This document shows positions 770 through 60,388 of a stretch of DNA of 64,000 nt, in pieces. Every line of letters starts with the position of its first letter. Positions within the stretch are counted from its first letter, which is position 1. The notes beneath the pieces are model-generated. The model had not been told where the DNA came from. It did not search any database and worked only from the letters and a program-made list of their open reading frames with translations. The stretch is from the sequence record NC_027364.1; one strand, given 5' to 3'. Position numbers and translations under genes: made by a program.

Positions 770-800
770 AATTTTCTACCCTAATGATTAACGTACAGGT

Positions 801-829: not shown

Positions 830-830
830 G

Positions 831-27710: not shown

Positions 27711-27824
27711 CGTTTTAATCTCTCTTAAAGTGTAGCGGGAACACTTCCCGCTCTCGATGTAAAACATTATACGCTTTTATCAGTACGGTGCAAGTACTTT
27801 CTACAAATACTTTTAAAATAGTTT

Positions 27825-27917
27825 TCTTTCTATATAGGAGTACTATTATTCAGTACTGAATCAATCCAGGGGAACTATCTTTCTATATAGGAGTACTATT
27901 ATTCAGTACTGAATCAA
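27825..27917. repeat. Two 40-bp direct repeats separated by 13 bp
   Basis: TCTTTCTATATAGGAGTACTATTATTCAGTACTGAATCAA at 27825-27864 and 27878-27917; each holds two AGTACT. Confidence 0.9.
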
Positions 27918-28535
27918 CCAAATCACTACTACACCCCATAAAACGGCCTCAGACGCATTCTAACGCATTAATACACCTAAGCTATACATTTGCACCACTC
28001 CCAACAATCCAGGGCGTTACGGGCCGTTTAAACGCGTTAAATTATTTTCAATTATTTTGTTTTTAGGTATTGACTTGATCCTGAAAAAGCGTATAATTAC
28101 TACATAGACGCGAGAAAGCGGAAACCCCAGAGGGTGCGGAATTACGCCCAAAATTCAAGATATAAAAAAAGGATACACTCCCGCACCCTAGCAGGTAAAC
28201 GCACTTTCTCAGTACTGAATTATAGTACCATAGTCCGGCCCAGGATGGCAAGCAAATTAATTAAAACTTTTTTCATCCAGGGTATTGCTTTATTTTTCCA
28301 GTACTGTATAATAGTTCCATCAAGTCGAGAAAGACTCAAGCCCACCGGGTGCATAGTTACGCCCAAAATTCAGTACTGAAAAAATTTTTAAAAATATCCG
28401 TCCAGGCCGTTGACATTGCCCCCAGTTTATAAGATAATGATTCCAGATTCAGAAAAATCTAACTCCAGATACTGCGGGGAAACTATCCCCACGCGGTAGG
28501 GGAACTATTGGAAAAAACAAAATAAAATTTTGATT

Positions 28536-28647
28536 TAGCCGTCTATACTTCCAGACGTGTAACCATCTAGCCGTTTAGCCGTCCAAACGTCTAGCCATCC
28601 AGCCATCCAGAAATCTAGCCGTTTAGCCGTCTAGATGGATAGCCATC
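28536..28647. repeat. Eight copies of the octamer (T/C)AGCC(G/A)T(C/T) in an ORF-free region
   Basis: Copies at 28536, 28568, 28576, 28592, 28600, 28616, 28624, 28640. Confidence 0.9.
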
Positions 28648-29705
28648 TTTACTTCCAGACTTCTGGAGGGCTAGACATATCTACGTCCAAAATCCACCCA
28701 GGGTAACTACGCCCAAAATCCGTCAGTACTATACCATAGATCTATCTTTTGAAAGGGAGTATTCAGTACTGCCACAATAGCCCTCACTATGTTACCCTAG
28801 GAGGATGAAGACTATCATGTAGTACTGAATACTGTTAGAGGGAATCCACCAGCTTGTGCTGGTGGCATAATGCTTTAGATTAAAATCAGTACTGACACCA
28901 TTCTGTTAATATCAGTACTGTTATTACGATTTTCATATGAGGTTCAAAAAGATGTACCACCACAGGAGGAACTATCTTTTCTGTACTGTCTCACGACAGG
29001 AGGTAGAGTAAATGAATTGTTCGCAGCAACTCATCACCCTATGTAGAACATTATACAGTACTGAATCATAATGTCAATAGCTTTCTTTCATTATTCAGTA
29101 CTGATATTCTTGAGAACTACCCGACTACAAACATCATTATATCCCACAAATCATAAACGTCCCAACGTAAATTTCAACTTTCGAAGATCCAACTTTTATT
29201 TCATAGGTACTCCAAAATTTTTAGGATCGAGATTTAGGATGGAGTACTAACCAACTTTTTGCTGGAGCCTCAAGGGGTAATGGAATTTTACCCCGAAGGG
29301 TAAAGGGGTAATTGAAATTAAGGTGAAAGTAATAATTCAGTACTAATCATTGCGTGATTACTTTTGATTACATTTGATGTAATTTGAAAAATGGAAAAGG
29401 AGCTTGGAAACTACAAAGTACGGCAGACTTCCTCTGCCTACTTAGTGGCATATCAGTACTGAATCCTTCCCGTGCATTCTTGAGCATTCTTGTCTATACT
29501 AATCAGTACTGAATCATATATAATCATTCTGTGATTCTACGGTGCTCATATAAATGTTTATATATGATTACTTATGACTACCTATGATTACGGGGTTTAG
29601 CCTGGGGAGAATCCTAGTGATCGCATTTGTCCAGGCTGAATTTTAACAATTCGCCTGTACATAAAGGTTGTTCACTAGGAGCTTCCCCTGTCTACTTGTG
29701 TTTAA

Positions 29706-32700
29706 TTACTTCCTATATATAAGCATTAAGATATAGTAGTACTGATTATACTGTACATTCTCTTTAATATTATAAGGGTCTATAGCAATCTCGGTACATC
29801 TGTTAAATGCATATCTATTAAATGCCAGTGGAATTATAGATCTAATCCATACTTGTTCATTTTCTTTTAGTTTACTTATATAGAAGTTTTTATACATAGT
29901 ATTCTCTATTAATTAATATGATAGTACTAGTGTTAGTACTGAGCACAATTGTTCTTTGTAGTTCTTAGGGTATATAGAATCTTTTATGCACTCATTGAAG
30001 TGCCATAGGTATAATCTTGGGTCGCATTCTTTATATATTCTTACGGGGACGAATGTTAGTTTTCGTATATAGAATTCTTTATGTTCTTTATTCATATTAG
30101 TACCTGAATATAAGTAGGATTATGTTATAGTACTGGTTAGTACTGCAATGATTCTCTATACATCGATTAACAGTTATGGAATAGCTATATCTGGCGTAAG
30201 CATTATCCAGCGGGATTTTACATTGAGCACTTAGAGAAAGTACAGTAGGTAGTGTATTCAAATAGAAGTCTTTGTAATTATTCATACAGGAATAGTATAC
30301 CTATGATACCTGAGTACAGGTTAGTACTGTTACCATCTTCGTTTGCGTTTAAAGTCATTTGAATACAATTATTGTAGCATACTCTGCCGAAAAATGTATT
30401 AGTACTTAAAGGTGGAGTAGTCCTTAGAAACATTTGTTCTGAGGGGCTTATGTATTTGGAGTAGAATTCTTTATGTTCTTTATTCATATTAGTTAGTGTC
30501 TGTATATAAGTAATAGTAAGAATACGTACTGCACATCTTCATCTTTAGTATTGAGTACTGTACGTATTGCGTCATTAAACAAGAATATAGTACTTGGGTC
30601 ATGAAAATTTAAAGGGGTTCTGGGTACGGCATGTTTGTAGTTCCCTTTAACAAATTGTGTGTAGTATTCTCTATGCATATTAGTACCTATATATTAGGGC
30701 GAGAATGTAGTACAATTCATATGGAATGTAATTTGGGGTGATCGCACACTGTGTATGGTAAATGAATTGTTCGGTATTTTTCTTATCCTTGATATCTATT
30801 GGGATTTGTGGTATAAGCATTTTGGAGTTTAGATCGAGATGGCTTAAGTAGAATTCTTTATGCATATTGTTCTCTTAGAATACGAAAGCTAGGTACAGGG
30901 TATGATACAGTACTCGATGATAGCTGTCAAAATCTAGTATACATGCTTTAGTGCACATAGTAAAGTACACTTTATCGTTTTGTGCATTGATACCGCGAGG
31001 TTTATCTAATAGATTAGTTCTGAGGTACATTGGGAAATATTTTGTGTAGTATTCTTTATGCATATTAGTACCTGAATATAAGTAGGATAGTGTTATATAG
31101 CTGGTCATAACTACTACTATTTTCTATACTTCGTTCTATGCAGTTATTGAATCCCAGTACTGCCAAATCGTTATCCAGGGGGACTTTGTATCTGGTGTAG
31201 TGTTCAAAAATGCTGGGGAGAAATTGTGTGTAGTATTCTTTGTGCATATTAGTACTTATATATTAGTAAAAGGATGTGATACAGTACTCGATTATAGTCT
31301 TCAATATATATCGAGGATTTAGTGCACTGAATGAAGTAGTCTTTTTCGTAGTTTTTTTCTATACCCAATGCAACGTTTGGTACAAGGTGTTGGAGATACA
31401 TTGGGAGTTTCTCTATGTAGTATTCTTTATACATATATTATCCTTAGTACTGGAACGCAAGGTACAGGGTGTGGTACAGTTGTACTTGATAATTGTTTTC
31501 ATTAGCTTCTTCATTAAGTACTTGTTCAGTACATGTACGGAAGTAATCAGCTTCATATATACAGTCAATACCGCGAGGTTCATCTTCTAATAGATTTCCT
31601 TGTAGAAACTTTGGTAGTTCTTTTATGTAGAATTCTTTATACATAGTTTGTAATATACGTAATGAGGTGATGCATTTTCTTATTAGTACTGATAATTTCC
31701 TGTACATGTTTTGTCAGATTGTACGCGTTTTTATAGAGTGCTGGATTATCGATTACAGTACTGTACATGAATAGTTCTTCCTCGGATAATTCTTTGCCTT
31801 GTAATTCTTTGAGGAATTGTAGTACTGTATCAGTTTCTTCTGTACGTTGTGCTTGCCAGAAGTGCATATTCTCGTGTACTTTTTCTGCATCAGTAGAGTA
31901 TATGCCACCCATTTGGAATTGTGCTGTATTGACATCGTGGGAGGTGTTACAATTCCCGAAGAAGTATGTATTCCCGAAGTATAGCATTAAAGTGCACGGG
32001 GTATTATCCAACTGCATATTGATGATGAAGGATGCGTTCTTTAGTACCTTTGTGCTCGTATTAGTACTCAATACTTTTAAATCAGTATTATAGATATTCA
32101 TATAATGAACAGCTATATTATTTTTCTTCATGTACAATTCAAGGTTCTTTGATACGTTAACTCCATTTGTACTGGATTTTTCCTTTTTATTTCGTTTCTT
32201 TAGTACATTCGGGTGATACGTATATGCAGATGTAACTGATTCTGCCTGAATACTATTGAGGTACTTAAAGTGCTTAAGGTATTGTTTGCTGTGTGCATTA
32301 AGTTTCATTTGGTTTCCTTTATATAGATGCCAGGGCGAGGATTTCCCTGTAGGGATTATCTTGTGTTAGTACAGCATAAATGCAGCTATTGAGATTAATA
32401 TTTTTAGTACTTTTTGTTCCTAGTTTGTAGTACTTCACGAAGGTGTCGTACATGAAACGGTCTTTTATGGTTATACGTTCTCTATAGAATTGTTGCATAG
32501 TATTCCTTAAATAGCGATTAGTTTCATTACTTCTCTGTATGTGTACTTTTCGTTTTGTGCATCTCTTGTGACGACATATAGGAAGGTGTGTTTATCTTTT
32601 TTGTTCCCGCAATTGTAGAAAATATTGAACTTATTGAAGTTGAATCTTTCGGCGTGTTGTAGTTTAGTTAAATAGAATTCTATGTTCATTTTCTTCCTTA

Positions 32701-33756
32701 CATTTCAATAAGTTTCAGTACTGCTCGGTACGTGTACTTAGTTGTCAGTGCTTCTTTAATAGAAATACAGAAGTAATGTTGTTTGTCTCTTATACTGCCG
32801 CGTTTGTAGTACCACACATGGGAGTTGTGACTGTACTTGTCTCTGTCGGATAGTTGTTGGTAGTAGTAGCTTATATGATTCATTGTAATTAGCCTTACTA
32901 TGTTAAAGTACTCGGTCCCTGGTGTACCTTTTAGAACTTAAAGATGAGGTTCAGGATAGAGCGGTACTTAGTTGCAGGGAACGTATGTTCTATTGCATAA
33001 CGTGTCACCATCCTGAAATCGTAATTATAATACAGATTATCCTTTCTCATAGGTGGTGCTAAAGAGAATGATAGCTGTTCTTGTTTGGGTAGTTTACTAC
33101 AATAGAAATCTTTATGATTATTCATAGAAATATATTAGTCCTATTAAACCTGAGTACATAATATTTTTGTTATTACATTCGATTGCTTCTATAGTACTAC
33201 GTATACAATTATTAAAGCAATCTCTGGCGTGTGGTGTATCTATACTTAAAGGTGATACACTCCTTAGAAACAATTGTTCTTCGTTGCTAAGGTATTTGGT
33301 GTAGAATTCTTTATGTTCAGTATTCATATTAGTACTCGATTAAAAGGGCAAGGATATAATAGTATTGCATACTTTCTGCCCCTTGTAAAGCATTTCTTAT
33401 GATATTACTCCTGTACGAGTTCAGGAGTTTAGGACAACGTTTGTAGTGTATAAAAGTATTTTGTGTATACAGTAGGCTTTCTCGTAGACCTTTTGTTGGT
33501 AGTGCATCGATGTAGTACTGTTCAATGTTCATATAGATAGCAGTACTAAGATTTTTGATAATTGTTTATTGCTATCCCCGCAGATGTTGCTGTGTAAAAT
33601 ACTCACAATGAGGGTATCAATTGCATTGTTCATCATAAGGGTGCATCCTGGACTATTATAATTTTTTAGCTCAATTAGCCACGAACTATCCGCGAGAAAT
33701 TCCCCGTACTCTAGTTCATTTAGAGTATTGAGGTAGTACTTAAGAGTATTTGTCAT
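29706..33756 (-). CDS. Tandem array of 17 paralogous ~60-75 aa proteins with N-terminal (H/Y)K(E/D)(F/Y)Y and C-terminal YxxLxLI(Y/F)xY
   Basis: Ten members at 29706-31641, an unrelated 223-aa gene, then seven members at 32319-33756. One of these is a 59-aa ORF at 32319..32498 missed by the track. Promoter at 33782-33810. Confidence 0.85.
31637..32308 (-). CDS. Hypothetical protein, EExFQYSLV-motif family, inserted in the HKEFY array
   Basis: ELSEEELFMYSTVID near the C-terminus. Confidence 0.65.
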   Translation of the reverse strand: MKLNAHSKQYLKHFKYLNSIQAESVTSAYTYHPNVLKKRNKKEKSSTNGVNVSKNLELYMKKNNIAVHYMNIYNTDLKVLSTNTSTKVLKNASFIINMQLDNTPCTLMLYFGNTYFFGNCNTSHDVNTAQFQMGGIYSTDAEKVHENMHFWQAQRTEETDTVLQFLKELQGKELSEEELFMYSTVIDNPALYKNAYNLTKHVQEIISTNKKMHHLITYITNYV

Positions 33757-33781
33757 GTGTAGTTCTCCTTATATTCCTTCT

Positions 33782-33810
33782 ATAGTACACCAGTACTGAA
33801 AGGATGTCAA
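33782..33810 (-). promoter_or_regulatory. sigma70-type promoter TTGACA-17-TACTAT for the HKEFY array
   Basis: Direct read; AGTACT lies in the spacer; divergent from the propeller array. Confidence 0.75.
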
Positions 33811-33858
33811 GGGTTTTCTTTATGGGGTAAATATGATATAATGAATAAGGAGGGAAAT

Positions 33859-35061
33859 ATGTTACCTTTTGGAAGAATGGTTAAGTACGCAAATATTGCA
33901 CCAGGTCCAGAACCTGTAGAGTTCTCAGATGTTTTACAACAACATTATACAAACTGTATGTATCTACATAACCCAACTAATACTTTATATGGTTATGGTA
34001 GTAATAACATGTATCAATTTGGTCTTGGGAATTCAGCAGCAGTTTCGTCATTTACAGTACTTGCAAGGAACTGTGCAGCCTTTTGGCTTGGTGTTCAAGG
34101 TTCGTTGATGATTGATTTGGATAATAAAATATACTACACTGGGTCTGTGGCTGCATTTTCTGATTATGGAGATGCAACACCTGTTAATGGTTATTTGACA
34201 ACATGGACTGATGTTACTGTTGCATTTAATAAAATAGGTGTTATGGCTAATATGATCAAGAGTGTATATATAGGTGAAAGTACTAGAATATTATTAACCG
34301 ATGGTAGAGTAATTGCGTGTGGAAGAAATACCAATGGTGAATGTGGCTCTGGTAATAAAAATTCCATCCCTACACTCACAGTTATGACTAATATGGGTGA
34401 AGTTACACATATGGCATGTTCATTACAAGGAACGCACTATATCAAATCAAATAAAGATGCATGGTTTTGTGGTAAGGATAACTTTGGTGAAAGTGGATGT
34501 GGTGGTAGTTCTGTTGTATATTTGAACAAATTCGTGATTAGTAATGTAGAACATATTAGTACTACATACGATGTTACTTGGTGGTTTACTACTGGTGGGT
34601 CTGTATATTATAGCGGGGCTAACAGTACTGGACAAGCGGGTAATGGTACGACTACATCGGTAAATCAGCTAACACCAATTAGGAACACATCGGTCACGGT
34701 TGATGTAAGTAAGTACAGTACTTTTATTTGTCCAAGTAATATGGGAAATGCATCAATTGGTGCACCTATGGCACAATACGCACCATATGTTAGAAGTAGT
34801 GGTGCTAACTCATATGGTCAAGAAGGTAATGGAACTAATACATTAGTTAGAACTTGGAATATTTTTAATCTTAGTGCAATAAGTGGTGGTTATGAAAATG
34901 TTCTTATGGCATCTAAAGATTGGAGCAGAACCATAATAATTACTAAAGATTATAAATTATATGCATGTGGTGGCTGGAATGGAAATGGTGGTAGATTGCC
35001 AGATGGCACTTATAGTATTACTACACTAACATTAATGCCAACGCAGTTATGGCAACAATAG
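33859..35061 (+). CDS. RCC1/BLIP-II-like beta-propeller protein 1 (MLPF family)
   Basis: Repeats GSNNMYQFGLG, GRNTNGECGSG, GKDNFGESGCG, GANSTGQAGNG, GANSYGQEGNG. Confidence 0.8.
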   Translation: MLPFGRMVKYANIAPGPEPVEFSDVLQQHYTNCMYLHNPTNTLYGYGSNNMYQFGLGNSAAVSSFTVLARNCAAFWLGVQGSLMIDLDNKIYYTGSVAAFSDYGDATPVNGYLTTWTDVTVAFNKIGVMANMIKSVYIGESTRILLTDGRVIACGRNTNGECGSGNKNSIPTLTVMTNMGEVTHMACSLQGTHYIKSNKDAWFCGKDNFGESGCGGSSVVYLNKFVISNVEHISTTYDVTWWFTTGGSVYYSGANSTGQAGNGTTTSVNQLTPIRNTSVTVDVSKYSTFICPSNMGNASIGAPMAQYAPYVRSSGANSYGQEGNGTNTLVRTWNIFNLSAISGGYENVLMASKDWSRTIIITKDYKLYACGGWNGNGGRLPDGTYSITTLTLMPTQLWQQ

Positions 35062-35069
35062 GAGGGAAT

Positions 35070-36179
35070 ATGTTACCTTTTGGAAGAATAATTAGGTATG
35101 GAAATATTGTCCCTGGTCCTAAAAAAATAATTAAAGTTGGTGCTTCTACACAAGGTCAATTCTTATTGACTGATTCACATGATTTATATTACATAGGTAG
35201 AAATCAAGGTGGTGAATCTGGAAATGGTAATACCAACACGGTGTCTTCGTGGACATTAGTAAGTGCAGATGTTTCTAATTTTTTCGTGGGTGATCGTACA
35301 CTTGTTATTATTAAAAATGATAATACTATATGGACATCAGGTCAAACGTACTGGTTCTCATCTTCTACAACTACTTCTTACAGTACTGTATTAGTTGAAA
35401 GGACTAGTTGGTTTACCAATGCTATACCAGTCAGTGAAATTGCTAATATTGTATGCACAAATGGTTTAATATTTGTACTTAGCACTAATTCAGTACTCTA
35501 TGGTGCAGGAGATAATGGATATCGTGGTTCTTTGGGTATTGGTTCATCATCAATTTACACATTAACTCAATGTGCTACGAACGTTCGTAAAGTAATGACC
35601 AATGCGAATGATAGTATGTATCTTACATTAGATAATAAGCTATATAGTTCTGGATGGAATAGTAGTGGGCAGCATGGTACGGGGAACCAAACACAAATTA
35701 ACACTTGGGGATTGCGTAGTTCTGGTGTAATCGATGCAGCCATTGGTGGTAATGCATTAAATTACTATAATGGTACATCATATTTCGTATGTGGTCAAAC
35801 TCCAAACTTTCTTAGTTCAGGTACGACTACATTCCGTGCAGTTCCTTTAAGTACTTTGCCTAATAGTTCTCCGTTGTTTATGACGAATTCACCTGCCTTA
35901 AATACTGCTACACAAATGGTAATTACTAGTACATATCAGAAGGGTGTTGGGGCGAACCGTGGTTTGGGATTAAACAATTCTCAAACTGGTGCTATATATA
36001 GTGCTACCAATTTACAATTACCCGTTGAAGTTAGTGAGATTAGGGATGTTCTTTTTAGTGATGGTTTGACATCGATATTAACCAAAAATGGAGACGTGTA
36101 TAGTACTGGATCGTATTACGCCATTCCAGGTGCAATCGAGGATGTTGCAGTCTTTACTAAAATTGATTTACCAAAATAA
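35070..36179 (+). CDS. RCC1/BLIP-II-like beta-propeller protein 2
   Basis: MLPFGRIIRYGN start after GGAGG; GRNQGGESGNG, GWNSSGQHGTG. Confidence 0.8.
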   Translation: MLPFGRIIRYGNIVPGPKKIIKVGASTQGQFLLTDSHDLYYIGRNQGGESGNGNTNTVSSWTLVSADVSNFFVGDRTLVIIKNDNTIWTSGQTYWFSSSTTTSYSTVLVERTSWFTNAIPVSEIANIVCTNGLIFVLSTNSVLYGAGDNGYRGSLGIGSSSIYTLTQCATNVRKVMTNANDSMYLTLDNKLYSSGWNSSGQHGTGNQTQINTWGLRSSGVIDAAIGGNALNYYNGTSYFVCGQTPNFLSSGTTTFRAVPLSTLPNSSPLFMTNSPALNTATQMVITSTYQKGVGANRGLGLNNSQTGAIYSATNLQLPVEVSEIRDVLFSDGLTSILTKNGDVYSTGSYYAIPGAIEDVAVFTKIDLPK

Positions 36180-36249
36180 CATAATGCCAGTACTCTGTAC
36201 TGGCTTTCTTATTTGTATTAAATATAGTATAACAAATAAAGGAGGGAAT

Positions 36250-37389
36250 ATGTTACCTTTTGCAAGAATGGTTAAGTACGGGAATATCGCACCTGAACTG
36301 ATTCTACCTAAAAACAGGTTACAATGTTCTGCTGATGCCAAATTTTATTTACACACAAATGGTAATCTATATTGGTTTGGTTCTTCAGCATATGGACAAA
36401 GTGGTAATGGTTCATTGGACTCTTCAACTGAATGGACTCTTGTCAACTCAAATGTTACACGATATTGGGGTGGGGTACAAGGAACAATTGCTATAAAGAA
36501 AGATGGTACTATTTGGTACACTGGTAGACGTACTGTTATTCCAATACTATCTTCAAACACTAACGGCGTTTGGGTTGATATAACACAGAACTTTACTGAT
36601 TTCGGTGTCAGTGCAGATGATATTGATAGTGTTGTGATATCTTCGTGTATGCGTGTATTTTTAAAAAATGGAAAGTGGTTCTACTGTGGTGCTGGTACTG
36701 GTGGTGTTTTTGGGAATGGATCAACTTCAAGCGTTTCACGATTCACCTATAGTACAATAGAAAATGTTATCAGTGCTGGTTGTGCAATATATAGTACTGG
36801 ATTAGTACTAAATGATGGTTCATATTGGTATGCAGGTAGAACGTTTGTATCAGGAACGACGACACAAAACTTGCTCACATTTACACAAGATACTTCGATT
36901 AGTAATGCAATTAAAGCAGTCAATACAAATGAAACTTCTTATATATTTCTTAATGATGGTAATGTTAAAGTTGCATCTATTAACGACTATGGACAAGCAG
37001 GTACAGGAAATAGGTCAGTAGCCCCAATGAGTACATTAATTCCAAATTTATCATTCCAAGGAGAAGTGGAGTTGGTGGGTGAGCTTGGGACAAACCTTAC
37101 CGGACCATCCTGTATAATTAATAATAATAATAAGTTATTTTCATGTGGCCTTAATTCAAATGGTCAATGTGGTATTGGTACAACTGATATGTATATAACA
37201 TCATTCGCTGAAATGGATCTTACTGCATTAGAAGGTAGTAATCTTAGTAGTTTTTGTAAGAGCTATTCTTATACGATGTTAGTTGACGAATATAATAATT
37301 TATACACATGTGGTGTACCCAATCTTACTGGAATGTCTTCAACTACTGTACCAACAAGGGTTCCTGATTCACTTCTACCGTGGAAATAA
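36250..37389 (+). CDS. RCC1/BLIP-II-like beta-propeller protein 3
   Basis: MLPFARMVKYGN; GSSAYGQSGNG, GLNSNGQCGIG. Confidence 0.8.
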   Translation: MLPFARMVKYGNIAPELILPKNRLQCSADAKFYLHTNGNLYWFGSSAYGQSGNGSLDSSTEWTLVNSNVTRYWGGVQGTIAIKKDGTIWYTGRRTVIPILSSNTNGVWVDITQNFTDFGVSADDIDSVVISSCMRVFLKNGKWFYCGAGTGGVFGNGSTSSVSRFTYSTIENVISAGCAIYSTGLVLNDGSYWYAGRTFVSGTTTQNLLTFTQDTSISNAIKAVNTNETSYIFLNDGNVKVASINDYGQAGTGNRSVAPMSTLIPNLSFQGEVELVGELGTNLTGPSCIINNNNKLFSCGLNSNGQCGIGTTDMYITSFAEMDLTALEGSNLSSFCKSYSYTMLVDEYNNLYTCGVPNLTGMSSTTVPTRVPDSLLPWK

Positions 37390-37460
37390 TATAATGCCAG
37401 TACACTGTACTGGCTTTCTTATTTGTATTAAATATAGTATAATGAATAAAGGAGGGAAAT

Positions 37461-38609
37461 ATGTTACCTTTTGCAAGAATGATGAATTATGGGAATATTG
37501 CCCCTGGTAAGGATAGGCGTTTTAAAATATATTCAAGTGATTCTATGTATCTTCATGATACTTATACTAATAAGTTGTATGCATCTTCTGCGACGAATTG
37601 GGGTACTGGAACAGGTGTAGCATCGAGTAAATTTATTCTTTGTGCGGAGAATGTTAAACGAGTTCTATTGGAAGATAACAGTAGTAGTTGTCAATTGTAT
37701 GAAGAGAAAGGTACTGGAAAAGTTTTTATCACTGGTAACACGAAGGCATTCACTGGTGTAACTGATACAAAAACTTTGTGGACGGACTGTACTACGTGGA
37801 TAACATCAGGTGGTATTAATGTTTCTGATATAAAATACATGAGTAGTTTTAATGATATGAAGGTGAATTTGATAACAAACGATGGTACGTTGTATTGTTG
37901 TGGAGTTAACAATAACTCGAACCTATCATCATTTGGTGATGGTACAAACATTAATTCTTTTAACACATTCAAAAGGGTAGATACTATAACTTCGGTCAAA
38001 AAGGCAGTTGGTAACATATACCTAAAAGAAGATAATACTTTATGGGGTTGTGGTTTTAACTATTACTATCAGTTAGGTACAGGTAATCAAACTTCTATTA
38101 CTGGGGTGACGATGATTTCTTCAGATGTTATAGATTTTGATGTAAGTTATCAGAGTACATTTTTTATTAAATCGGATAATAATTTGTACGCTTGTGGTAA
38201 ACAGTTCGGTGCACAATACGGGAACGAATTTGGCACAGGTGGTACTTCTTCATCTACCGATATACAATACAAAACTCCGACATTATTGAGTTCAGGAGTT
38301 TATACTCTATATACTTGTGTTAGTAACATGGCATCACATATAGTTAAAGGTGATGAAGTTCTATACGCATCTGGGTCGAATGGATTTGGTCAATTAGGTG
38401 TTGGTAATAATATTAATCAGTACTCATATACTCCTTCGTATACTTCGTTTAATAGTTCGTGTAATTTGGTACGCACTCCATCTGGTTCACTTATACTTAC
38501 GGACACTGAGAAATTATATTATTGTGGGTATGCTATGGTAGTAATGGGGGGAATTGCTGGACAAAACATTCTTAGTTATACAGAAGTTGATATGTCATTT
38601 ATACAATGA
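37461..38609 (+). CDS. RCC1/BLIP-II-like beta-propeller protein 4
   Basis: MLPFARMMNYGN; GFNYYYQLGTG, GSNGFGQLGVG. Confidence 0.8.
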   Translation: MLPFARMMNYGNIAPGKDRRFKIYSSDSMYLHDTYTNKLYASSATNWGTGTGVASSKFILCAENVKRVLLEDNSSSCQLYEEKGTGKVFITGNTKAFTGVTDTKTLWTDCTTWITSGGINVSDIKYMSSFNDMKVNLITNDGTLYCCGVNNNSNLSSFGDGTNINSFNTFKRVDTITSVKKAVGNIYLKEDNTLWGCGFNYYYQLGTGNQTSITGVTMISSDVIDFDVSYQSTFFIKSDNNLYACGKQFGAQYGNEFGTGGTSSSTDIQYKTPTLLSSGVYTLYTCVSNMASHIVKGDEVLYASGSNGFGQLGVGNNINQYSYTPSYTSFNSSCNLVRTPSGSLILTDTEKLYYCGYAMVVMGGIAGQNILSYTEVDMSFIQ

Positions 38610-38680
38610 TTTAATGCCAGTACACTGTACTGGCTTTCTTATTTGTATTAAATATAGTATAATGAATAAAGGAGGAATTT

Positions 38681-39871
38681 ATGTTACCTTTTGCAAGAAT
38701 GATGAATTATGGGAATATTGTCCCAGTACCACTTCAAATTAAGAAAATAATCCCAACTGATTTAGATGTTGTGGTTCTGTATACGGATGGTCAACTATAT
38801 GCACGTGGGAATAATAGTTTTGGGAAATTCGGTAGAGGAAACAACACTGCATTAAAATCATGGACATTAATTAGAGAAAACGTTAACGATTGCTGGCTTA
38901 CACAAGGAACTTTATTAGTAAAAGATAATGACTCAAATTATTTTTATTGTGGATATGGTGATCATCTTGGTTTACCAACTAGTACTACTACGTTTTTAAG
39001 TTATAACCAATATATTGAAAATTTGTACACGCAAAGTTCAAGTACTTCAATTAAACAGATGTATGGAGGTACTACGTGGTTTACGGTATTAATGGATAAT
39101 AATACAATATGGAGTACTGGTTGGAGTGGGGCTAGACAATTCGCTGATGGTACTGGTAGTACTCAACAAATAACAGATGGATCATTTGTAAAAGCTGTCA
39201 CGCCTAATGTTGATATTGCACAAATACAGTCAACAAATAACTGTGTAATGTTTTTTGATACACAAAATAATTTATATATTGGTGGTGGTACGTCAGGTAT
39301 AAGTACCAGTACCACATGGACACCATTTAATGAATATACTTTATATAAACCAAGTACAACATACACAAAAACGTTACAATACACTGGATGCTCAAGTGGT
39401 GCAGTCAGTGCTTTGGTTGAGAATCCAAGTTCTGGTGCACGTCAGTTTCTAGTTGGTGGTTTAGCGAGTAATGGTGCATGGGGTAACAATACCACAACCA
39501 GTTCGGCACTTGCTGTATTAGGGAGCAATAGTACGACATTACCAACTGGAACTTTGTATTCAATTCATACAGGATACCCAACACAATCTAGTATACTAGT
39601 TACGAGTACTGGTGTATATGCAACTGGTTTAAATGCCAGTAGTTATGCTGGTTCATTGGGTATTGGTACTAGTGCAACTGTTGGTAAGTTTACTGCATGT
39701 CCAATGCCTACACAAATAACATATTCTATGTATGATAAAATAAAAATATATCGCGGTTCGTATCGTACTTTTCTAACTGCTGATATGAAAAATATATATT
39801 CAACCGGAACTTATGATGATGGTGGTCCTAGTACAACTAGATATGTTCTGGATACACCTAGACAATTGTAA
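38681..39871 (+). CDS. RCC1/BLIP-II-like beta-propeller protein 5
   Basis: MLPFARMMNYGN; GNNSFGKFGRG, GWSGARQFADG. Confidence 0.8.
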   Translation: MLPFARMMNYGNIVPVPLQIKKIIPTDLDVVVLYTDGQLYARGNNSFGKFGRGNNTALKSWTLIRENVNDCWLTQGTLLVKDNDSNYFYCGYGDHLGLPTSTTTFLSYNQYIENLYTQSSSTSIKQMYGGTTWFTVLMDNNTIWSTGWSGARQFADGTGSTQQITDGSFVKAVTPNVDIAQIQSTNNCVMFFDTQNNLYIGGGTSGISTSTTWTPFNEYTLYKPSTTYTKTLQYTGCSSGAVSALVENPSSGARQFLVGGLASNGAWGNNTTTSSALAVLGSNSTTLPTGTLYSIHTGYPTQSSILVTSTGVYATGLNASSYAGSLGIGTSATVGKFTACPMPTQITYSMYDKIKIYRGSYRTFLTADMKNIYSTGTYDDGGPSTTRYVLDTPRQL

Positions 39872-39945
39872 TAATTTCGCCAGTACTTCAGTACTGGCTT
39901 TTCTTTTTTGTATTAAATATATTATAATGAATAAAGGAGGGAATT

Positions 39946-41125
39946 ATGTTACCTTTTGGAAGAATGATGAATTATGGGAATATTGCCCCTGGCAAAGATA
40001 CTGTTGTTAAAATTAATAGTGATGAAAATTCAATAAGCGTATTATACAGTGATGGGTCATTATATATGCGTGGACGGAAACCAATTATCAAAAATGGGAG
40101 TTACTGGTTCATCTTTTTTAGATAGATGGGTTTTATGTCCTTATAGTGTTGATGATTTCTGGAGTTCTTTATATTGTACTATAATTAGAACAAAACAAGG
40201 GGAATTGTACTATAGTGGAACTAACTCAGTTTTTGGTATATCATCTTCTGTTTCAACATGGACTCGTTGTGAATCATATTTTGGATCTATTTCTCCGAGT
40301 TCAATAAAAGATATAAAAATAACATCATCAACCAGTACTAACAATTCCATGTTAATACTAACAAGTGACGGTCAGTTATATGGTATAGGCATGAATGGTG
40401 CAAGTGAATTGGGTACAGCAACTACACCAATTACATCTCCACTCTTAATAGACACTAGTGTATCTGCAATTGCATCTAGTGAAATGAGCAGAAACTTTCA
40501 CTATATAAAAGATGGTATATATTATCGTTGTGGTGAGAATACTTTTTATCAATTAGGAACCGGTGATAATAATCCTATTACTACTTTTACTGCATTGAAT
40601 CTTGGTAGTTCTCATGTAATTGCAGTACAAGCTACACGATGGGTAACACGTTTGATTGTTCAAAGTAGTACATCTGCTTTGTCTTTAATGGTGGCTGGTT
40701 GGAACACACAGTTGACTATAGGTGGTTCTGAAAATACTGCTATAATAAGGTCATCATTTACTACAAATCCCTATACCGATATAACAGCAAATTCATTCGA
40801 TAAACTTTCACCAGTATCCTATGTTAATGCAATAAAATCCAGTACTAACATTATTAATACGAATGGTAAGGGATATAATTCTAATGGTGCTGGATTAGGC
40901 CGCAACGCATTCTCTGGGAATTATGGTTCAATATTACCAATAGAATTCTTTGATGATAGTGTTGACTTATCATATGTTGAGTGGTTTGGTACGATTGGTA
41001 ATGGTTCAGTATCGGTAGTTAGTATAGGTGAGGATTTATACTGGACTGGAAACCCTGGGTATTTTACTGAACAAGGTGAGACTGGATATATATATAAATT
41101 CAAAAAGTGCATTCCTTTTAGATAA
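39946..41125 (+). pseudogene. Beta-propeller protein 6, split by a +1 frameshift near 40075 (real or sequencing error)
   Basis: MLPFGRMMNYGN..LYMRG frame stops at codon 60; the +1 frame continues NQLSKMG..GENTFYQLGTG. Confidence 0.7.
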
Positions 41126-41196
41126 ACACAATGCCAGTACTCTGTACTGGCTTTCTTATTTGTATTAAATATAGTATAATGAATAAGGAGGGAATT

Positions 41197-42348
41197 ATGT
41201 TACCTTTTGCAAGAATGATTCAGTACGGGAATATTAAACCTGTTCCTGTAACACCAACGATAAAAGATTTTAAGATTGGTTTTTCCCATGAAGTGTTATT
41301 GGACAGTGCAGGTGATGTGTGGGGTATTGGATATAATACCGCTGGTCAGTTGGGATTTCTGGATGCTAACACAAATTCAATAGGAATGTGGTCTAAGATA
41401 TATGAGAATGTTAGATTAATTGGCGTTACTGCCAATTATACAGTTGTAGTTACAAATAATAATAGAATACTTTACGCTGGAAATAACTTAATTTCTAATA
41501 CTACAACGTTTGGGTGGAACGATATAACGTCTAGTATGGGAGCGGTTGTAGTGGATAGCATCGATGCATTATATTGCACAGATGGCATGATGCATATTAA
41601 AACTGCTGATGGTTCTTTATACGCATATGGACGTAATATGAACGCAAACGCTGGAGTTACTGGCGTTTCTGGAGTTATTAGTGTTGCAACTAAAGTTAGT
41701 GGTTTACCATCGGCTGTGAAAGATATACGATATACGTTTAGTTATGGTACAGTACTATGTCAATTAGATACCACCTCGGTATATGGATGGGGAAGAAATG
41801 TCAATGGTGAATTAGGTCAGGGGAACGCAGCCGCAGTTCCTACCCCATCCCAAAGGGCGGGTGCTTCTATTGCTATAGGTACTTCGTATAATGCTACTGC
41901 AATTGTTTCCGGTACTGCATCGTTGGTTACATGTGGTGGACAAAATGATGGTCAGTTAGGTAATGGTATTACTACTGCTGGTAATGTATACACATATGGT
42001 GCTAGAGCATACCCAAGCGATCTTAATAATATAAGAAGTCCAGTGGATTGCAGTACAACTTATACATCTGCATTTATGAGTCCAGATGGCATATATTACA
42101 CGGGTTCGAACCGAAGTGTGTTTGGTGGTCCGAGCGGGACTGCCACGGTTGCAGTATATACCAAATGTAGTGATTTACCAATATTATATTCTAATATAAC
42201 ACAGTGGTGTAGTGGTACTATTGGTGGTGCGATATGTAGCAGTACTGAATTATATCAGTGTGGGACCGGTAGATACATTGCCGGAGATGGGCAGAACGCA
42301 ACTAGGTATGGGTTTAGAAAGACACCATTACCTTGGGATGCTTATTGA
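41197..42348 (+). CDS. RCC1/BLIP-II-like beta-propeller protein 7
   Basis: MLPFARMIQYGN; GYNTAGQLG, GRNVNGELGQG, GGQNDGQLGNG. Confidence 0.8.
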   Translation: MLPFARMIQYGNIKPVPVTPTIKDFKIGFSHEVLLDSAGDVWGIGYNTAGQLGFLDANTNSIGMWSKIYENVRLIGVTANYTVVVTNNNRILYAGNNLISNTTTFGWNDITSSMGAVVVDSIDALYCTDGMMHIKTADGSLYAYGRNMNANAGVTGVSGVISVATKVSGLPSAVKDIRYTFSYGTVLCQLDTTSVYGWGRNVNGELGQGNAAAVPTPSQRAGASIAIGTSYNATAIVSGTASLVTCGGQNDGQLGNGITTAGNVYTYGARAYPSDLNNIRSPVDCSTTYTSAFMSPDGIYYTGSNRSVFGGPSGTATVAVYTKCSDLPILYSNITQWCSGTIGGAICSSTELYQCGTGRYIAGDGQNATRYGFRKTPLPWDAY

Positions 42349-42419
42349 CATTATGCCAGTACTCTGTACTGGCTTTCTTATTTGTATTAAATATAGTATA
42401 ATGAATAAAGGAGGAATTT

Positions 42420-43595
42420 ATGTTACCTTTTGTAAGAATGTTGGATTATGGAAATAAAGTTTTACCATATATTCCCAATTTTGTTAAATTAGTTACCCCG
42501 TCATGTGGTTATTCATATACATGCACGATGATGCTTGACAAAAATGGTTCAATATGGGCTATTGGTCTTCAGAATGGTGGAATTTTTGGTTTAGGTCATA
42601 CTAATCAAGTAACTGAATGGACACAAATATACAGCAATGTTAAAGATTTTTGGTGCAGTACAATGAACTCTTTTTGTCTAATACGCACAAATGATGATAG
42701 ATTCTTTTATAGTGGTTTAGATAAATGGCTAGGTAATAACACAACAAATACAGTGACAACATTCACTGAATGTACAAGCTATTTCGCACAATTTGGTATT
42801 TCAAAAATTAAAGAGATATACGTGGGTTATGATTATGCTTTGATTTTAGATACAGATAATAGTTTATATTTGTTAGGTGATAATACTGGTGCTAAGTTTG
42901 GAATAAACACTGCATCATATTATAATAAATTTACATTTTTAGTGGATAATGTTAAAAAATTCTGTTCATCGATAACGCCAGCTAACTGGATTATTAAACT
43001 TGATGATACAATGTGGCGTACAGGAACAACAACTTCCGGTACTTTGGGAAATAGTAAGCAACAAACGTATGTATTCCCTTGGGTTCAATATAAGGGTACA
43101 CCTATTACAGAAGCAATAGATATTTTTTGTAGTTCGAATTATATTGGTATTATAACAAAAGGTACACCAGAATCATGTCCAATGTACACTCTAGGCTTTC
43201 AAGGTTATGGTCAATTGGGTAATAATAATGTAACATCTGCTTATAAGTTAAACCCAGTACTATCAACTACAGTTCCAGATGATAGTGAATTCATTCGAAT
43301 AGAAAACACTAGTACTCGTGGACTCGTATATTATAGTTCAGGTAAAATTTATAGTACTGGTTATAATAACAATGGTCAATTGGCAAATAATACTACAAGA
43401 GAATCAGGTTCATTTGTTGAAGCAATTTTACCTAGTGGTGTTCAATTTAAGAAAAGTGAATCACTAGTTGCAGGAAATGATGCAACATTGTATATGTTCA
43501 TTAATAATAAATTATACTACGCAGGGAAATCACCAGATAATGTATCTGCAAGCAGTTCATCTGTTATGAAAGAATTCCTACTTCCTACAATTTGA
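42420..43595 (+). CDS. RCC1/BLIP-II-like beta-propeller protein 8
   Basis: MLPFVRMLDYGN; GFQGYGQLGNN, GYNNNGQLANN. Confidence 0.8.
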   Translation: MLPFVRMLDYGNKVLPYIPNFVKLVTPSCGYSYTCTMMLDKNGSIWAIGLQNGGIFGLGHTNQVTEWTQIYSNVKDFWCSTMNSFCLIRTNDDRFFYSGLDKWLGNNTTNTVTTFTECTSYFAQFGISKIKEIYVGYDYALILDTDNSLYLLGDNTGAKFGINTASYYNKFTFLVDNVKKFCSSITPANWIIKLDDTMWRTGTTTSGTLGNSKQQTYVFPWVQYKGTPITEAIDIFCSSNYIGIITKGTPESCPMYTLGFQGYGQLGNNNVTSAYKLNPVLSTTVPDDSEFIRIENTSTRGLVYYSSGKIYSTGYNNNGQLANNTTRESGSFVEAILPSGVQFKKSESLVAGNDATLYMFINNKLYYAGKSPDNVSASSSSVMKEFLLPTI

Positions 43596-43670
43596 TTATT
43601 TTAAATGCCAGTACAGAGTGCTGGCTTTTCTTTTTGATTAAATATAGTATAATGAATAAAGGAGGGATTT

Positions 43671-44876
43671 ATGTTACCTTTTCCAAGGATGATAAAATAC
43701 GCAAATAAAATGAAAGTTCCTGAAGTGAAAGAAATCTTTATTTACAATGGTTATAGTGCGTCAGTTATTCCAGCAACAGCACTCTTACTATTATATAAAA
43801 ATGGAGACTTAATGGGTATAGGTGGAACTAGTTCACAAAACTATGGATTCGGAAATGGTGTACCTAATGCGAAAGTAAAAGAGTGGGCTTTAATATACCA
43901 AAATGTAAAACGTTTTAGAACAGCCCAAGGTTCTTTTAATTTAATCCAAACCGAAGATAATAAATTTTATTACAGTGGCGTAGGTAGAGCTATTGGTACA
44001 GGATTAAGTACTGTCAGTACTTATACTGATTGTACTTCATATTTTACATCAGTATTCAATGCAACACAATTGTCGCAAATTAAGGACATTCAAATTGTAG
44101 GGGAGGGTATTTTTGTTTTACTTCAAAATGGTACGCTATATGGAATGGGGGCCAATACACAGGGATATTTTGGTAATAACACAACCACAAGATTATCAAC
44201 ATTTACTTCAATTAATACGAATGTGGATAGTGTAAAAACAGGTTCAAGTGCAGTGATTGTGCAGAAAATTGATAAAACACTTTGGGTCACTGGTCAAAAC
44301 ACATGGGGTTCACTTGGTATAAGTAATGGTGAAACTAACGTTAAAGTATGGACACAAATGGGTGCATTAGCCAACAATACTGTTATACATTATGAACTTG
44401 GTGGGAGTGCATCATGGGTTGTATCTAAACACAACACGAATAATACATATACAGTTCGTGCAAGTGGGATTCAATCGGAAGGTAACTTGGGTAATGGTTC
44501 AGCCGCTTCATCAGGGACAGTATTATCTACAATCTCCACTCTACCAATATCAGATAATATGGAAATGAAATCAAATTCATTAACATATGGTGGGCTTACG
44601 GTTAAAACTAACAATTCACTTTATATGTGTGGTATAAACACATATGGTAGGCTCGGTCGCGGTAATACCACATCAAGTACTACATTTGTAGTTCCAGTTG
44701 ATGCACCTAAAGTTGGCAGCATCGAGTTATTCTGTCCAAGTGAATGTACAAATGTGTATATGGATAATCAAGGGGATGTGTATTTGAGTGGCTATATCCC
44801 ACAAGCGACAGGTACAACAGTTTCTGATTATTACACTAAATTTCAATTATATAAAATACCCAGTCGTGGTATATAA
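43671..44876 (+). CDS. RCC1/BLIP-II-like beta-propeller protein 9
   Basis: MLPFPRMIKYAN; GQNTWGSLGIS, GINTYGRLGRG. Confidence 0.8.
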   Translation: MLPFPRMIKYANKMKVPEVKEIFIYNGYSASVIPATALLLLYKNGDLMGIGGTSSQNYGFGNGVPNAKVKEWALIYQNVKRFRTAQGSFNLIQTEDNKFYYSGVGRAIGTGLSTVSTYTDCTSYFTSVFNATQLSQIKDIQIVGEGIFVLLQNGTLYGMGANTQGYFGNNTTTRLSTFTSINTNVDSVKTGSSAVIVQKIDKTLWVTGQNTWGSLGISNGETNVKVWTQMGALANNTVIHYELGGSASWVVSKHNTNNTYTVRASGIQSEGNLGNGSAASSGTVLSTISTLPISDNMEMKSNSLTYGGLTVKTNNSLYMCGINTYGRLGRGNTTSSTTFVVPVDAPKVGSIELFCPSECTNVYMDNQGDVYLSGYIPQATGTTVSDYYTKFQLYKIPSRGI

Positions 44877-44947
44877 AATAAAGCCAGTATTTTGTACTGG
44901 CATTTTTTTGTCCTAAATATAATAACGATTTACATTTGGAGGATACA

Positions 44948-59644: not shown

Positions 59645-59889
59645 TTTTTTCTCTATGTCTATATTTATAGTATAAAGAAAAGGCTGACCGAAGTCAACCT
59701 TATTTTGTTACTTAGATTGTTCTTGTGCAGGTGGATTTACTTTTTGATCCACTACATAGAATACACCACCAACCAGTACTGCGGCGATGAGTGCAGCAAC
59801 TACAAATTTTAAACCTTGCATATATGATACCTCAGTTATATTGAGAAGTTATGATACAACAAAGGGCTGACCTTAGTCAACCCTTTTTA

Positions 59890-60273: not shown

Positions 60274-60388
60274 TTTTATAACTCCTATAAGAGATAAATT
60301 TTACTATAATATTTATAGTTCCGTTGTCATTTATATCGAATGACATAAAACATTATATCATAATAAGAATGGTTGTCCCAAAGTTAAA

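What the first reader, a model, noticed from the sequence alone, without database searches (positions are those of the whole stretch)
29706..33756. Second micro-protein accordion: 17 Tyr-rich HKE(F/Y)Y paralogues
Seen: ~185-bp units with conserved ends and a variable middle. Gene junctions are recycled: CATATTAGTACCTGAATATAAGTAGGAT is identical at 30093-30120 and 31061-31088, and 30278..30487 closely matches 33118..33327. The family is unrelated in sequence to the LGT family but has the same logic and flanks the early region on the other side. Inference: a second diversifying inhibitor or adaptor library evolving by unequal crossover.
Basis: partly seen in the sequence, partly recalled or inferred. 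Interest (0 to 1): 0.7.

Follow-up and report, generated by a model that had tools for sequence, protein, structure and literature searches.

The report
Variable array of tiny early phage proteins
A jumbo E. coli phage (PBECO4) carries one operon of 17 tiny, related helical proteins of unknown function, and related phages gain, lose and reshuffle whole genes in it by recombination between the conserved gene ends, which is typical of a host-interaction gene repertoire.

Summary
The window is Escherichia phage PBECO4 (Asteriusvirus, 348 kb). Bases 29706-33756 hold 17 minus-strand genes of 59-75 aa and one unrelated 223-aa gene. They sit -8 to +47 nt apart behind a single conserved sigma70-type promoter. 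"17 paralogues" is too generous. Twelve are solid paralogues. Three form a second subfamily, one belongs to a third, and the first gene is only marginally similar. The family occurs only in Asteriusvirus-like phages, has no Pfam, PDB or named relative, and is predicted with high confidence to be a compact four-helix protein. Copy number is 15-23 in 13 arrays. The differences are whole-gene, in-register indels at the conserved gene ends, and some genes are mosaics, so unequal homologous recombination is well supported. It is not an accordion in the strict sense. No two copies in one genome exceed 64% identity, and orthologues are under purifying selection (dN/dS 0.23-0.45). This is an old birth-and-death family. 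The array sits 264 nt inside the edge of the ~20.7-kb terminal repeat, next to the early region. Early expression and a role as host-protein or defence binders are inferred, not shown. It is a new member of a known kind, of moderate interest.

The parts
33782..33810 (-). sigma70-type promoter of the array (TTGACA, 17-nt spacer, TACTAT), with the phage's palindrome CAGTACTG (33791-33798) in the spacer
   Evidence: Found, read. Both hexamers and the palindrome are identical in 9 genomes while other spacer bases vary. The same palindrome marks the early promoters of the terminal-repeat region.
33765..33770 (-). Shine-Dalgarno AAGGAG, 8 nt before the first start codon
33529..33756 (-). gene A, 75 aa; marginal family member (A type)
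   Evidence: Leave-one-out E=0.55. Conserved in 9 of the 10 near-relative arrays and in TH47; absent from CMSTMSU and not detected in JNE01.
33329..33532 (-). gene B, 67 aa; B-type subfamily
   Evidence: Leave-one-out E=0.01. B-type profile against core profile: hhalign probability 71%, P=3.8e-5, collinear over the full length.
33118..33327 (-). gene C, 69 aa; core member, closest paralogue of T (53-54% aa, 73% nt)
32931..33125 (-). gene D, 64 aa; core member
   Evidence: E=3.6e-10
32698..32883 (-). gene E, 61 aa; subfamily 2
   Evidence: AF2 model pLDDT 89.6, four helices.
32507..32689 (-). gene X, 60 aa; subfamily 2. Relatives carry four genes (F-I) at this slot.
32319..32498 (-). gene J, 59 aa; subfamily 2
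31637..32308 (-). embedded 223-aa gene, not a family member (phrog_29152, unknown function), present in every array examined
   Evidence: dN/dS 0.40-0.50.
31444..31644 (-). gene Y, 66 aa; core member (start as in RefSeq gp283)
31249..31434 (-). gene M, 61 aa; core member
31065..31247 (-). gene O, 60 aa; core member. This is the protein modelled (pLDDT 94, four helices).
30875..31063 (-). gene Q, 62 aa; core member
30680..30865 (-). gene R, 61 aa; core member
30493..30678 (-). gene S, 61 aa; core member
30278..30487 (-). gene T, 69 aa; core member; absent with U from 121Q and G17
30097..30285 (-). gene U, 62 aa; core member
29913..30095 (-). gene V, 60 aa; core member
29706..29897 (-). gene W, 63 aa; core member; last gene of the array
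30070..30101 (.). 32-nt direct repeat over the start of V, identical to 30462-30493 over the start of T. The 392-nt spacing equals the T+U indel between PBECO4 and 121Q/G17.
   Evidence: (family D2)
30462..30493 (.). second copy of the 32-nt direct repeat (start of T)
29422..29438 (-). weak terminator-like hairpin downstream of the array
   Evidence: consensus match only
29442..29442 (.). position matching the inner edge of the ~20.7-kb direct terminal repeat, as defined in phage G17
   Evidence: The last base of the G17 record aligns to G17 left coordinate 20668 and to window 29442. Terminal redundancy of about 20 kb was reported from coverage (PMC6563267).

Best explanation
The region is one operon of an old, diverged multigene family of about 60-aa soluble four-helix proteins, specific to Asteriusvirus jumbo phages. 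It lies just inside the left terminal repeat, next to the early region. Shown: the genes are real and under purifying selection. They share one conserved sigma70-type promoter that carries the phage's early-promoter palindrome. They are packed so tightly that the last codons of one gene often provide the ribosome-binding site of the next. The conserved 5' and 3' gene ends act as homology for unequal recombination, which adds, removes and recombines whole genes in register, so related phages carry 15-23 copies and mosaic members. Inferred: host RNA polymerase transcribes the operon early, and the proteins work in the cytoplasm as binders. A conserved hydrophobic skeleton (helices 1 and 4) would present variable surfaces (helix 2, the loop, helix 3) to different host proteins or variants of them, most plausibly host-takeover or defence targets. 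Under this reading, selection for breadth keeps many distinct copies rather than amplifying one. My confidence is about 0.85-0.9 in the evolutionary mechanism, about 0.6 in early expression, and about 0.3 in the binder or anti-defence role.
For: Identity and coding: the region is 100% identical to PBECO4. ORFs cover 97% of the strand against 4.5% in shuffles. Family ORFs are intact in every genome compared except the two records flagged UNVERIFIED: CMSTMSU has interrupted copies, and TH47's intactness was not separately checked. Pooled dN/dS is 0.23-0.45 and pN<pS with p<=2e-6. Operon: gene gaps are -8 to +15 nt, with one of 47. There is one promoter plus a Shine-Dalgarno site, conserved in 9 genomes. 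The palindrome CAGTACTG occurs 55 times against 0.83 expected and sits in the spacers of the strong early promoters. The T4-type late motif TATAAATA does not occur in the array. Position: the terminal-repeat edge maps to window 29442. Protein: AF2 pLDDT 94 and 89.6, four helices. No 19-residue segment is hydrophobic enough for a membrane span, and pI ranges from 4.4 to 9.6. Sixteen hydrophobic columns have entropy 1.21 bits against 2.36 bits for the other 44, and helix 2 is the most variable. None of the phAPEC6 array genes gp540c-gp548c appears in the part of the virion mass-spectrometry table that I read, whereas the neighbouring RCC1-like gp549 and gp551 do. Recombination: copy numbers come, the orthologue map, unit-sized in-register indels, and mosaics (gene N of ELP-22 is 100% identical to M over the first ~45 nt, then 83-90% to K). 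Restriction: only 37 and 33 database relatives, all 57-84 aa, and 36 phage records, all Escherichia or Salmonella jumbo phages.
Against: There are no expression data for any Asteriusvirus in the literature searched. The promoter matches only 10 of 12 consensus bases, and promoter-like sites in this stretch are no more frequent than in shuffles. No known inhibitor, anti-defence protein or DNA-binding fold resembles the models. The divergent JNE01 lineage differs across about 41% of its genome (PMC10868205), so the array's hypervariability is not unique to it. Homology of the A-type gene to the rest is unproven.
Confidence: 0.5

Rival explanations
1. The small proteins serve the phage's own assembly, for example as chaperones or partners of the neighbouring, also multiplied, RCC1-like proteins, which are transcribed divergently from the same 84-nt intergenic region.
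For: Nine to ten RCC1-like paralogues start 85 nt from the array. Two of them are virion proteins in phAPEC6. The synteny of the RCC1 array, the small-gene array and the 223-aa gene is kept even in a metagenomic relative.
Against: The array has a host-type promoter with the early palindrome. Copy numbers do not pair up: 17 small genes against 9-10 RCC1-like genes in the window, and 11 RCC1-like genes reported for phAPEC6. In JNE01 the first RCC1-like protein is 96% identical to PBECO4's while every small protein is only 29-59% identical to any member of the other lineage, so the two sets do not co-vary.
Confidence: 0.1
2. The array is mostly dispensable filler. Tandem duplicates would be tolerated because a large capsid leaves spare packaging room, and they would drift without an important function.
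For: [quoted passage not shown] Copies are lost in some isolates (SD-15_S21 has 15). dN/dS is higher than in a neighbouring early gene (0.23-0.45 against 0.12-0.21).
Against: Selection is clearly purifying. Reading frames stay intact through every in-register indel. The order of subfamilies is the same in the very divergent JNE01 array. No paralogues have decayed in the verified genomes.
Confidence: 0.15
3. The proteins are small DNA-binding regulators or nucleoid-type proteins, possibly acting on the CAGTACTG palindromes that mark the early promoters.
For: They are small helical proteins encoded beside a region dense in a palindromic motif. Several members are basic, with pI 9.0-9.6.
Against: Other members are acidic (pI 4.4-5.7). 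Foldseek found no helix-turn-helix or other DNA-binding fold. A single operator would not need 15-23 diverged binders.
Confidence: 0.07
4. It is a true gene accordion: copies are amplified rapidly under current selection and then collapse.
For: Copy number varies between close isolates and the indels are unit-sized.
Against: No near-identical copies exist in any of 12 phage genomes; the maximum is 64% aa identity. Each slot has conserved orthologues under purifying selection.
Confidence: 0.05

Closest known systems
PHROG family phrog_11711 (unknown function)
   Same: Twelve of the 17 window proteins match it, with best E=5e-28. A Pharokka-type annotation of phage SHEFM2K already labels some array genes with it.
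   Different: The PHROG has no function and covers only the core subfamily. The subfamily-2, B-type and A-type genes are outside it.
Tandem gene arrays of jumbo phages (Hua et al. 2017, PMC5646251; repeated for phAPEC6 in PMC7247149)
   Same: The same phage group and the same idea. [quoted passage not shown]
   Different: It is a one-sentence remark about a larger array, most likely another family (this family has 16 copies in 121Q). That paper gives no analysis of copy-number change, recombination junctions, selection, promoter or fold.
Hyperplastic regions of T4-superfamily phages (small, mostly early genes of unknown function between conserved core modules; from my own knowledge, Comeau et al. 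2007)
   Same: Small early-type genes, high turnover between close relatives and sharp edges against conserved flanks. Against JNE01 the flanks are 88-97% identical up to window 33763 and 29652, while only two short patches (about 230-310 nt, 72-74% identity) align inside the array.
   Different: Here the island is filled by one paralogous family that turns over by recombination within the family, not by a mix of unrelated imported genes.
Host-takeover operons in or near terminal repeats (SPO1 host-takeover module, Twort-like 'Tre' genes, T5 pre-early genes; from my own knowledge)
   Same: Clusters of small genes at the genome end behind host-type promoters. The adjacent terminal-repeat region of this phage has ten perfect 12/12 sigma70 promoters.
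   Different: The array lies just outside the repeat, not in it. There is no sequence or structural similarity and no expression data.
Poxvirus gene accordions and the terminal multigene families of large eukaryotic DNA viruses (conceptual analogy only; from my own knowledge)
   Same: Tandem paralogues next to terminal repeats, with copy number differing between isolates through unequal recombination.
   Different: There is no recent amplification of near-identical copies, no homology, and the role against host defence is unproven here.

Membership tests
phrog_11711 | significant match to the family profile | tested here: met
   12 of 17 members match, best E=5e-28. The five non-core members do not.
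One paralogous family of 17 | each member recognised by a profile of the others | tested here: inconclusive
   12 members score E<=2e-8, three about 1e-4, one 0.01 and one 0.55. Profile-profile comparisons: core against subfamily 2, P=2.7e-4, probability 42%; core against B type, P=3.8e-5, probability 71%. Both are collinear over the full length. The subfamily-2 model matches core-family models only at TM about 0.46-0.48.
Gene accordion (rapid amplification) | near-identical tandem copies within a genome | tested here: not met
   The closest within-genome pair is 42-64% aa identical in 12 genomes.
Gene accordion (rapid amplification) | copy number differs between close isolates | tested here: met
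   15-23 copies in 13 arrays.
Birth-and-death multigene family evolving by unequal homologous recombination | indels of whole units, in register, bounded by repeated sequence | tested here: met
   Indels of 190-209, 392 and 578 nt have edges at the same offset in the flanking genes. The 392-nt indel equals the spacing of the 32-nt identical repeat.
Birth-and-death multigene family evolving by unequal homologous recombination | mosaic (recombinant) members | tested here: met
   ELP-22 gene N is M-like (100%) at its 5' end and K-like (83-90%) after that. Gene P is a three-way mosaic.
Birth-and-death multigene family evolving by unequal homologous recombination | purifying selection on retained copies | tested here: met
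   Pooled dN/dS 0.23-0.45, z=4.6-5.9.
Known anti-defence or host-shutoff proteins (anti-CRISPR, Ocr-like DNA mimics, Tad/Acb/Gad types) | sequence or fold similarity to a characterised member | tested here: not met
   No Pfam hit better than E=0.038 for a single member, and no hit in NCBIfam or PADLOC. The PDB profile search gave only a designed repeat protein at E=0.004. Foldseek against the PDB gave nothing at E<=0.001. AcrIIC4 and an Acb2/Tad1-named protein appear only at E>4.
Early (host-RNA-polymerase) transcription unit | conserved sigma70-type promoter of the same class as the phage's early promoters | tested here: met
   This is a sequence inference only.
Early (host-RNA-polymerase) transcription unit | transcripts present early in infection | not testable with these tools
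   No transcriptome of an Asteriusvirus was found in the library.
Terminal-repeat-encoded host-takeover genes | location inside the direct terminal repeat | tested here: not met
   The repeat edge maps to window 29442, 264 nt beyond the last array gene.
LGT family of the same window (1770-7286) | profile similarity | tested here: not met
   hhalign probability 0.4%. It belongs to a different PHROG, phrog_4148.
Membrane or secreted micro-proteins | hydrophobic segment long enough to span a membrane | tested here: not met
   The maximum 19-residue Kyte-Doolittle mean is 1.18 or less. The C-terminal hydrophobic stretch is modelled as helix 4 of a four-helix model with pLDDT 94.

The most novel reading that the evidence does not exclude
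The array would be a phage counterpart of the terminal multigene families of large DNA viruses. It would be an evolvable set of mini-proteins with a previously unseen four-helix fold. Each would neutralise a different host defence or takeover target early in infection, and recombination at the conserved gene ends would continually re-sort the set to match the host strains encountered.
Probability: 0.25. Interest if true: 0.7.

Novelty: new member of a known kind. Interest (0 to 1): 0.45.

Why it matters
Most genes of jumbo phages have no known function, and RefSeq annotates only 6 of the 18 genes here. This locus is a clean, well-bounded example of how a phage keeps and reshuffles a repertoire of tiny proteins. 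It has a defined promoter, visible recombination junctions, a confident new fold and natural variation across dozens of isolates. If the proteins bind host targets, the array is a ready source of new small inhibitors and a marker for differences in host interaction among therapeutic jumbo coliphages. If they do not, it still documents birth-and-death evolution of micro-proteins in a virus.

Tried and rejected
Stop-codon reassignment was tested as a reason for the scarcity of long ORFs in 8-28 kb; no single reassignment opens the region, and it is simply dense in small early genes. There are no tRNAs and no Rfam families in the window. Pfam, NCBIfam, PADLOC and PDB sequence searches gave nothing meaningful. 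Foldseek against the PDB and BFVD found only family members; weak hits such as the GroEL apical domain, AcrIIC4 and an Acb2/Tad1-named protein have E>4 and were discarded. A profile scan of all six frames found no further family members elsewhere in the window. The 223-aa gene is not a family member with an insertion: the profile does not hit it, and it has its own PHROG and no PDB relative. The three CAGTACTG copies inside the array have no -35 element next to them, so they are not read as internal promoters. The internal 11/12 promoter-like site at 30930-30902 was not followed up. One literature search was too broad and gave nothing. Searches of papers on Sharanji, CBB, phAPEC6, UE-S1, fEgEco12 and G17 found no description of this family. 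No repaired, consensus or ancestral sequence was built. The consensus lines printed by the alignment tool were not used.
Full report
Identity of the window. Bases 29500-34000 are 100% identical to Escherichia phage PBECO4 (NC_027364/KC295538) at 153500-158000. The window is therefore record 124001-188000 of a 348-kb Asteriusvirus jumbo myovirus. Thirty-six phage records carry the region, all Escherichia or Salmonella jumbo phages of 310-386 kb.

What is at 29706-33756. The minus strand carries 17 ORFs of 59-75 aa and one of 223 aa (31637-32308), head to tail. Gaps between a stop and the next start are -8 to +15 nt, with one of 47 nt. Start-to-start spacing is 184-242 nt. ORFs of at least 55 aa cover 97% of this strand, against a mean of 4.5% and a maximum of 21% in 1000 shuffles. 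The 28-mer at 30093 and 31061 is identical and unique, and 30278-30487 is 73% identical to 33118-33327. Tyr makes up 11% of residues. Among the 12 core genes the first six codons have 77% mean pairwise nucleotide identity, the last ones about 50%, and the interior 34-45%; chance is 28%. RefSeq annotates only 6 of these 18 genes, whereas newer annotations of relatives call nearly all of them.

How many paralogues. In leave-one-out profile tests 12 genes (C, D, Y, M, O, Q, R, S, T, U, V, W in my lettering) are recovered at E of 2e-8 or better. The trio 32319-32883 comes back at about 1e-4, 33329-33532 at 0.01, and the first gene 33529-33756 at 0.55. Twelve of the 17 match phrog_11711, which has no known function. 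Profile-profile comparison links the core weakly but collinearly to the trio's subfamily (P=2.7e-4, probability 42%) and to a B-type subfamily (P=3.8e-5, probability 71%). G17 and phAPEC6 carry a second B-type gene where PBECO4 has the 47-nt gap. The best description is therefore 12 clear paralogues, 3 more of a second subfamily, 1 of a third, and 1 uncertain. All have the same size, sit in one operon and are probably of common origin. The LGT family at 1770-7286 is unrelated (probability 0.4%).

The proteins. There is no Pfam, NCBIfam or PADLOC match. A profile search of 5.8 billion clustered proteins found 37 relatives, and an exhaustive search of 1.84 billion representatives found 33. All are 57-84 aa stand-alone proteins from Asteriusvirus-like genomes or short metagenomic contigs. 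AlphaFold2 on a 54-sequence alignment gives pLDDT 94 and pTM 0.77 for the 31065-31247 protein, with two short and two long helices. A subfamily-2 protein gives pLDDT 89.6 and also four helices. Foldseek finds no solved structure at E<=0.001, and in the viral library only family members. The PDB profile search is empty apart from a designed repeat protein. No 19-residue segment is hydrophobic enough to span a membrane, and pI ranges from 4.4 to 9.6. Sixteen columns that are mostly hydrophobic are conserved (entropy 1.21 bits) and lie mainly in helices 1 and 4. The other 44 columns are variable (2.36 bits), helix 2 most of all. This suggests a fixed scaffold with diversified surfaces.

Expression signals and genomic position. 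TTGACA-17 nt-TACTAT lies at 33810-33782 on the minus strand, followed by AAGGAG 8 nt before the first ATG. In nine genomes both hexamers are invariant while other spacer bases change. The spacer holds the palindrome CAGTACTG. This 8-mer occurs 55 times in the window against 0.83 expected. It sits just upstream of the -10 element in the strong promoters of 9.7-29.1 kb: a -35 hexamer followed 8 nt later by the palindrome gives 28 matches against 0.52 expected. That region has ten perfect 12/12 sigma70 promoters on the minus strand. The T4-type late motif TATAAATA is depleted (2 against 14.4 expected) and absent from the array. In many junctions the last codons of a gene (an Arg or Lys codon, a Tyr codon, then TAA) form the purine-rich stretch 7-9 nt before the next ATG, so the conserved C-terminus and the ribosome-binding site overlap; reading this as translational coupling is my inference. 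The right end of the G17 record, which includes both terminal repeats, aligns to G17 coordinate 20668 and to window 29442. The G17 authors reported terminal redundancy of about 20 kb from coverage (PMC6563267). Other records about 20 kb longer than PBECO4's place the array 20-21.5 kb from a record end. The array therefore begins 264 nt inside the inner edge of one terminal-repeat copy, and the LGT array abuts the other copy. On the collapsed PBECO4 map the two arrays flank the roughly 21-kb early region (about 8467-29442). Hua et al. instead assumed headful packaging for 121Q (PMC5646251), so the nature of the genome ends is not settled. None of the array genes appears in the portion of the phAPEC6 virion proteome table that I read, whereas two neighbouring RCC1-like proteins do.

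Evolution. A family profile counts 15 to 23 members in ten near relatives: SD-15_S21 15, G17 and 121Q 16, PBECO4 and phAPEC6 17, CMSTMSU 18, E9.1, BF17 and SHEFM2K 21, ELP-22 23. JNE01 has 15 and TH47 17, and a metagenomic contig has 21. Clustering at 70% identity gives a slot map in which most genes have one-to-one orthologues and the differences are whole genes. Array-wide DNA alignments show indels of 190-209, 392 and 578 nt, that is one, two or three units. Their two edges fall at the same offset within the flanking genes, near the 5' or 3' ends, so reading frames are preserved. The clearest case is genes T and U, which 121Q and G17 lack. The 392-nt difference equals the distance between two 32-nt identical repeats covering the starts of T and V (30462-30493 and 30070-30101). 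Mosaics exist. ELP-22 gene N is 100% identical to M over its first ~45 nt and 83-90% identical to K afterwards, and gene P combines Y-like, M-like and Q-like stretches. No genome holds two copies more than 64% identical, so nothing points to recent amplification. Orthologues are under purifying selection: pooled dN/dS is 0.23-0.45 and pN<pS with z=4.6-5.9. This is similar to the embedded 223-aa gene (0.40-0.50) and weaker than for a neighbouring early gene (0.12-0.21). Two terminal genes (V, W) reach ratios above 1 in single pairs, but on very few changes. In the UNVERIFIED record CMSTMSU at least two family genes are interrupted. Against the divergent JNE01, DNA identity is 88-97% up to window 33763 on one side and 29652 on the other. 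Between those points only two short patches align. Every small protein is 29-59% identical to its best match and the 223-aa protein is 42% identical, yet the order of subfamilies is the same. The array is thus a sharply bounded hypervariable cassette. JNE01 fails to align with PBECO4 over about 41% of its genome (PMC10868205), so this feature is not unique to the array.

Interpretation. Unequal homologous recombination between conserved gene ends is well supported as the way the array changes. 'Accordion' is the wrong word, because this is an old birth-and-death family in which many distinct copies are kept. Early transcription by host polymerase is a reasonable inference from the promoter class and position, but it is not shown. 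The function remains unknown. I favour cytoplasmic binders of host proteins (takeover or defence targets) because of the timing signals, the scaffold-plus-variable-surface pattern, the strain-to-strain turnover and absence from virions, with a probability of about 0.3. The rivals are partners of the adjacent RCC1-like proteins, tolerated filler, and small DNA-binding proteins. Each is weaker for the reasons given in its entry.

Comparison with what is known. Tandem arrays in 121Q and phAPEC6 have been mentioned in a sentence each (PMC5646251; PMC7247149). The family exists as an unnamed PHROG. I found no paper that describes this array, its variation, its promoter or its fold (34 papers mention Asteriusvirus). 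The general phenomenon is familiar from my own knowledge: plastic regions of small early genes in T4-type phages, host-takeover clusters near terminal repeats, and multigene families near the ends of large DNA viruses. I therefore file it as a new member of a known kind.

Noticed in passing
window 8400-29520 and 33791-33798: The palindrome CAGTACTG occurs 55 times in the window against 0.83 expected. It lies in the spacer, directly upstream of the -10 element, of the strong sigma70-type promoters of the early region (28 matches against 0.52 expected). It may be an operator or a promoter-class element.
   Followed up: partly
window 29442 (and about 8467): The inner edges of the ~20.7-kb direct terminal repeat defined in phage G17 map here. 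The PBECO4 record is a collapsed map holding one repeat copy, with the HKE(F/Y)Y array and the LGT array each abutting one edge.
   Followed up: partly
window 27770-29700: About 1.9 kb has no ORF longer than 81 aa. It is conserved at 84-96% even in divergent relatives and holds 12 CAGTACTG copies, promoter-like sites on both strands (a 12/12 match at 29077-29050) and a run of 8-nt tandem units at 28540-28690. It may contain non-coding RNA genes or terminus-related signals.
   Followed up: partly
window 33841-46100: Nine ~360-430-aa RCC1-like (beta-propeller) paralogues plus a shorter tenth sit in tandem on the plus strand, divergent from the small-gene array. Their number also differs between isolates, and two are virion proteins in phAPEC6.
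   Followed up: partly
window 1770-7286: The LGT family comprises 24 tandem genes of 70-96 aa (one sampled member hits phrog_4148, unknown function). It is unrelated to the family studied here and is probably the 'more than 30 similar genes' array noted for 121Q.
   Followed up: partly
window 216-1536: Three adjacent ORFs of 105-131 aa share a C-terminal motif (Ser-Leu-Val, an aromatic residue or His, then Asp, preceded by Glu-Glu-x-Phe-Gln). This looks like a third small paralogous family.
   Followed up: no
window 59662-59669 and 60310-60317: These are the only two copies of TATAAATA (the T4-type late-promoter motif) in the window, against 14.4 expected. Both are on the minus strand just upstream of genes (58133-59644 and 59890-60273), so the motif is probably functional and avoided elsewhere.
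   Followed up: no
window 9923-9950, 12180-12207, 15399-15426, 19019-19046: A 28-nt hairpin recurs, identical in three of its four copies, and overlaps a -35-like TTGACT. It looks like a combined terminator and promoter unit of the early region.
   Followed up: no
window 29490-29530, plus strand: A promoter-like site containing the palindrome points into the 3' end of the array on the antisense strand.
   Followed up: no
NC_027364 153706-157756 (= window 29706-33756): The RefSeq annotation calls only 6 of the 18 genes of this operon, two of them with shortened starts.
   Followed up: yes
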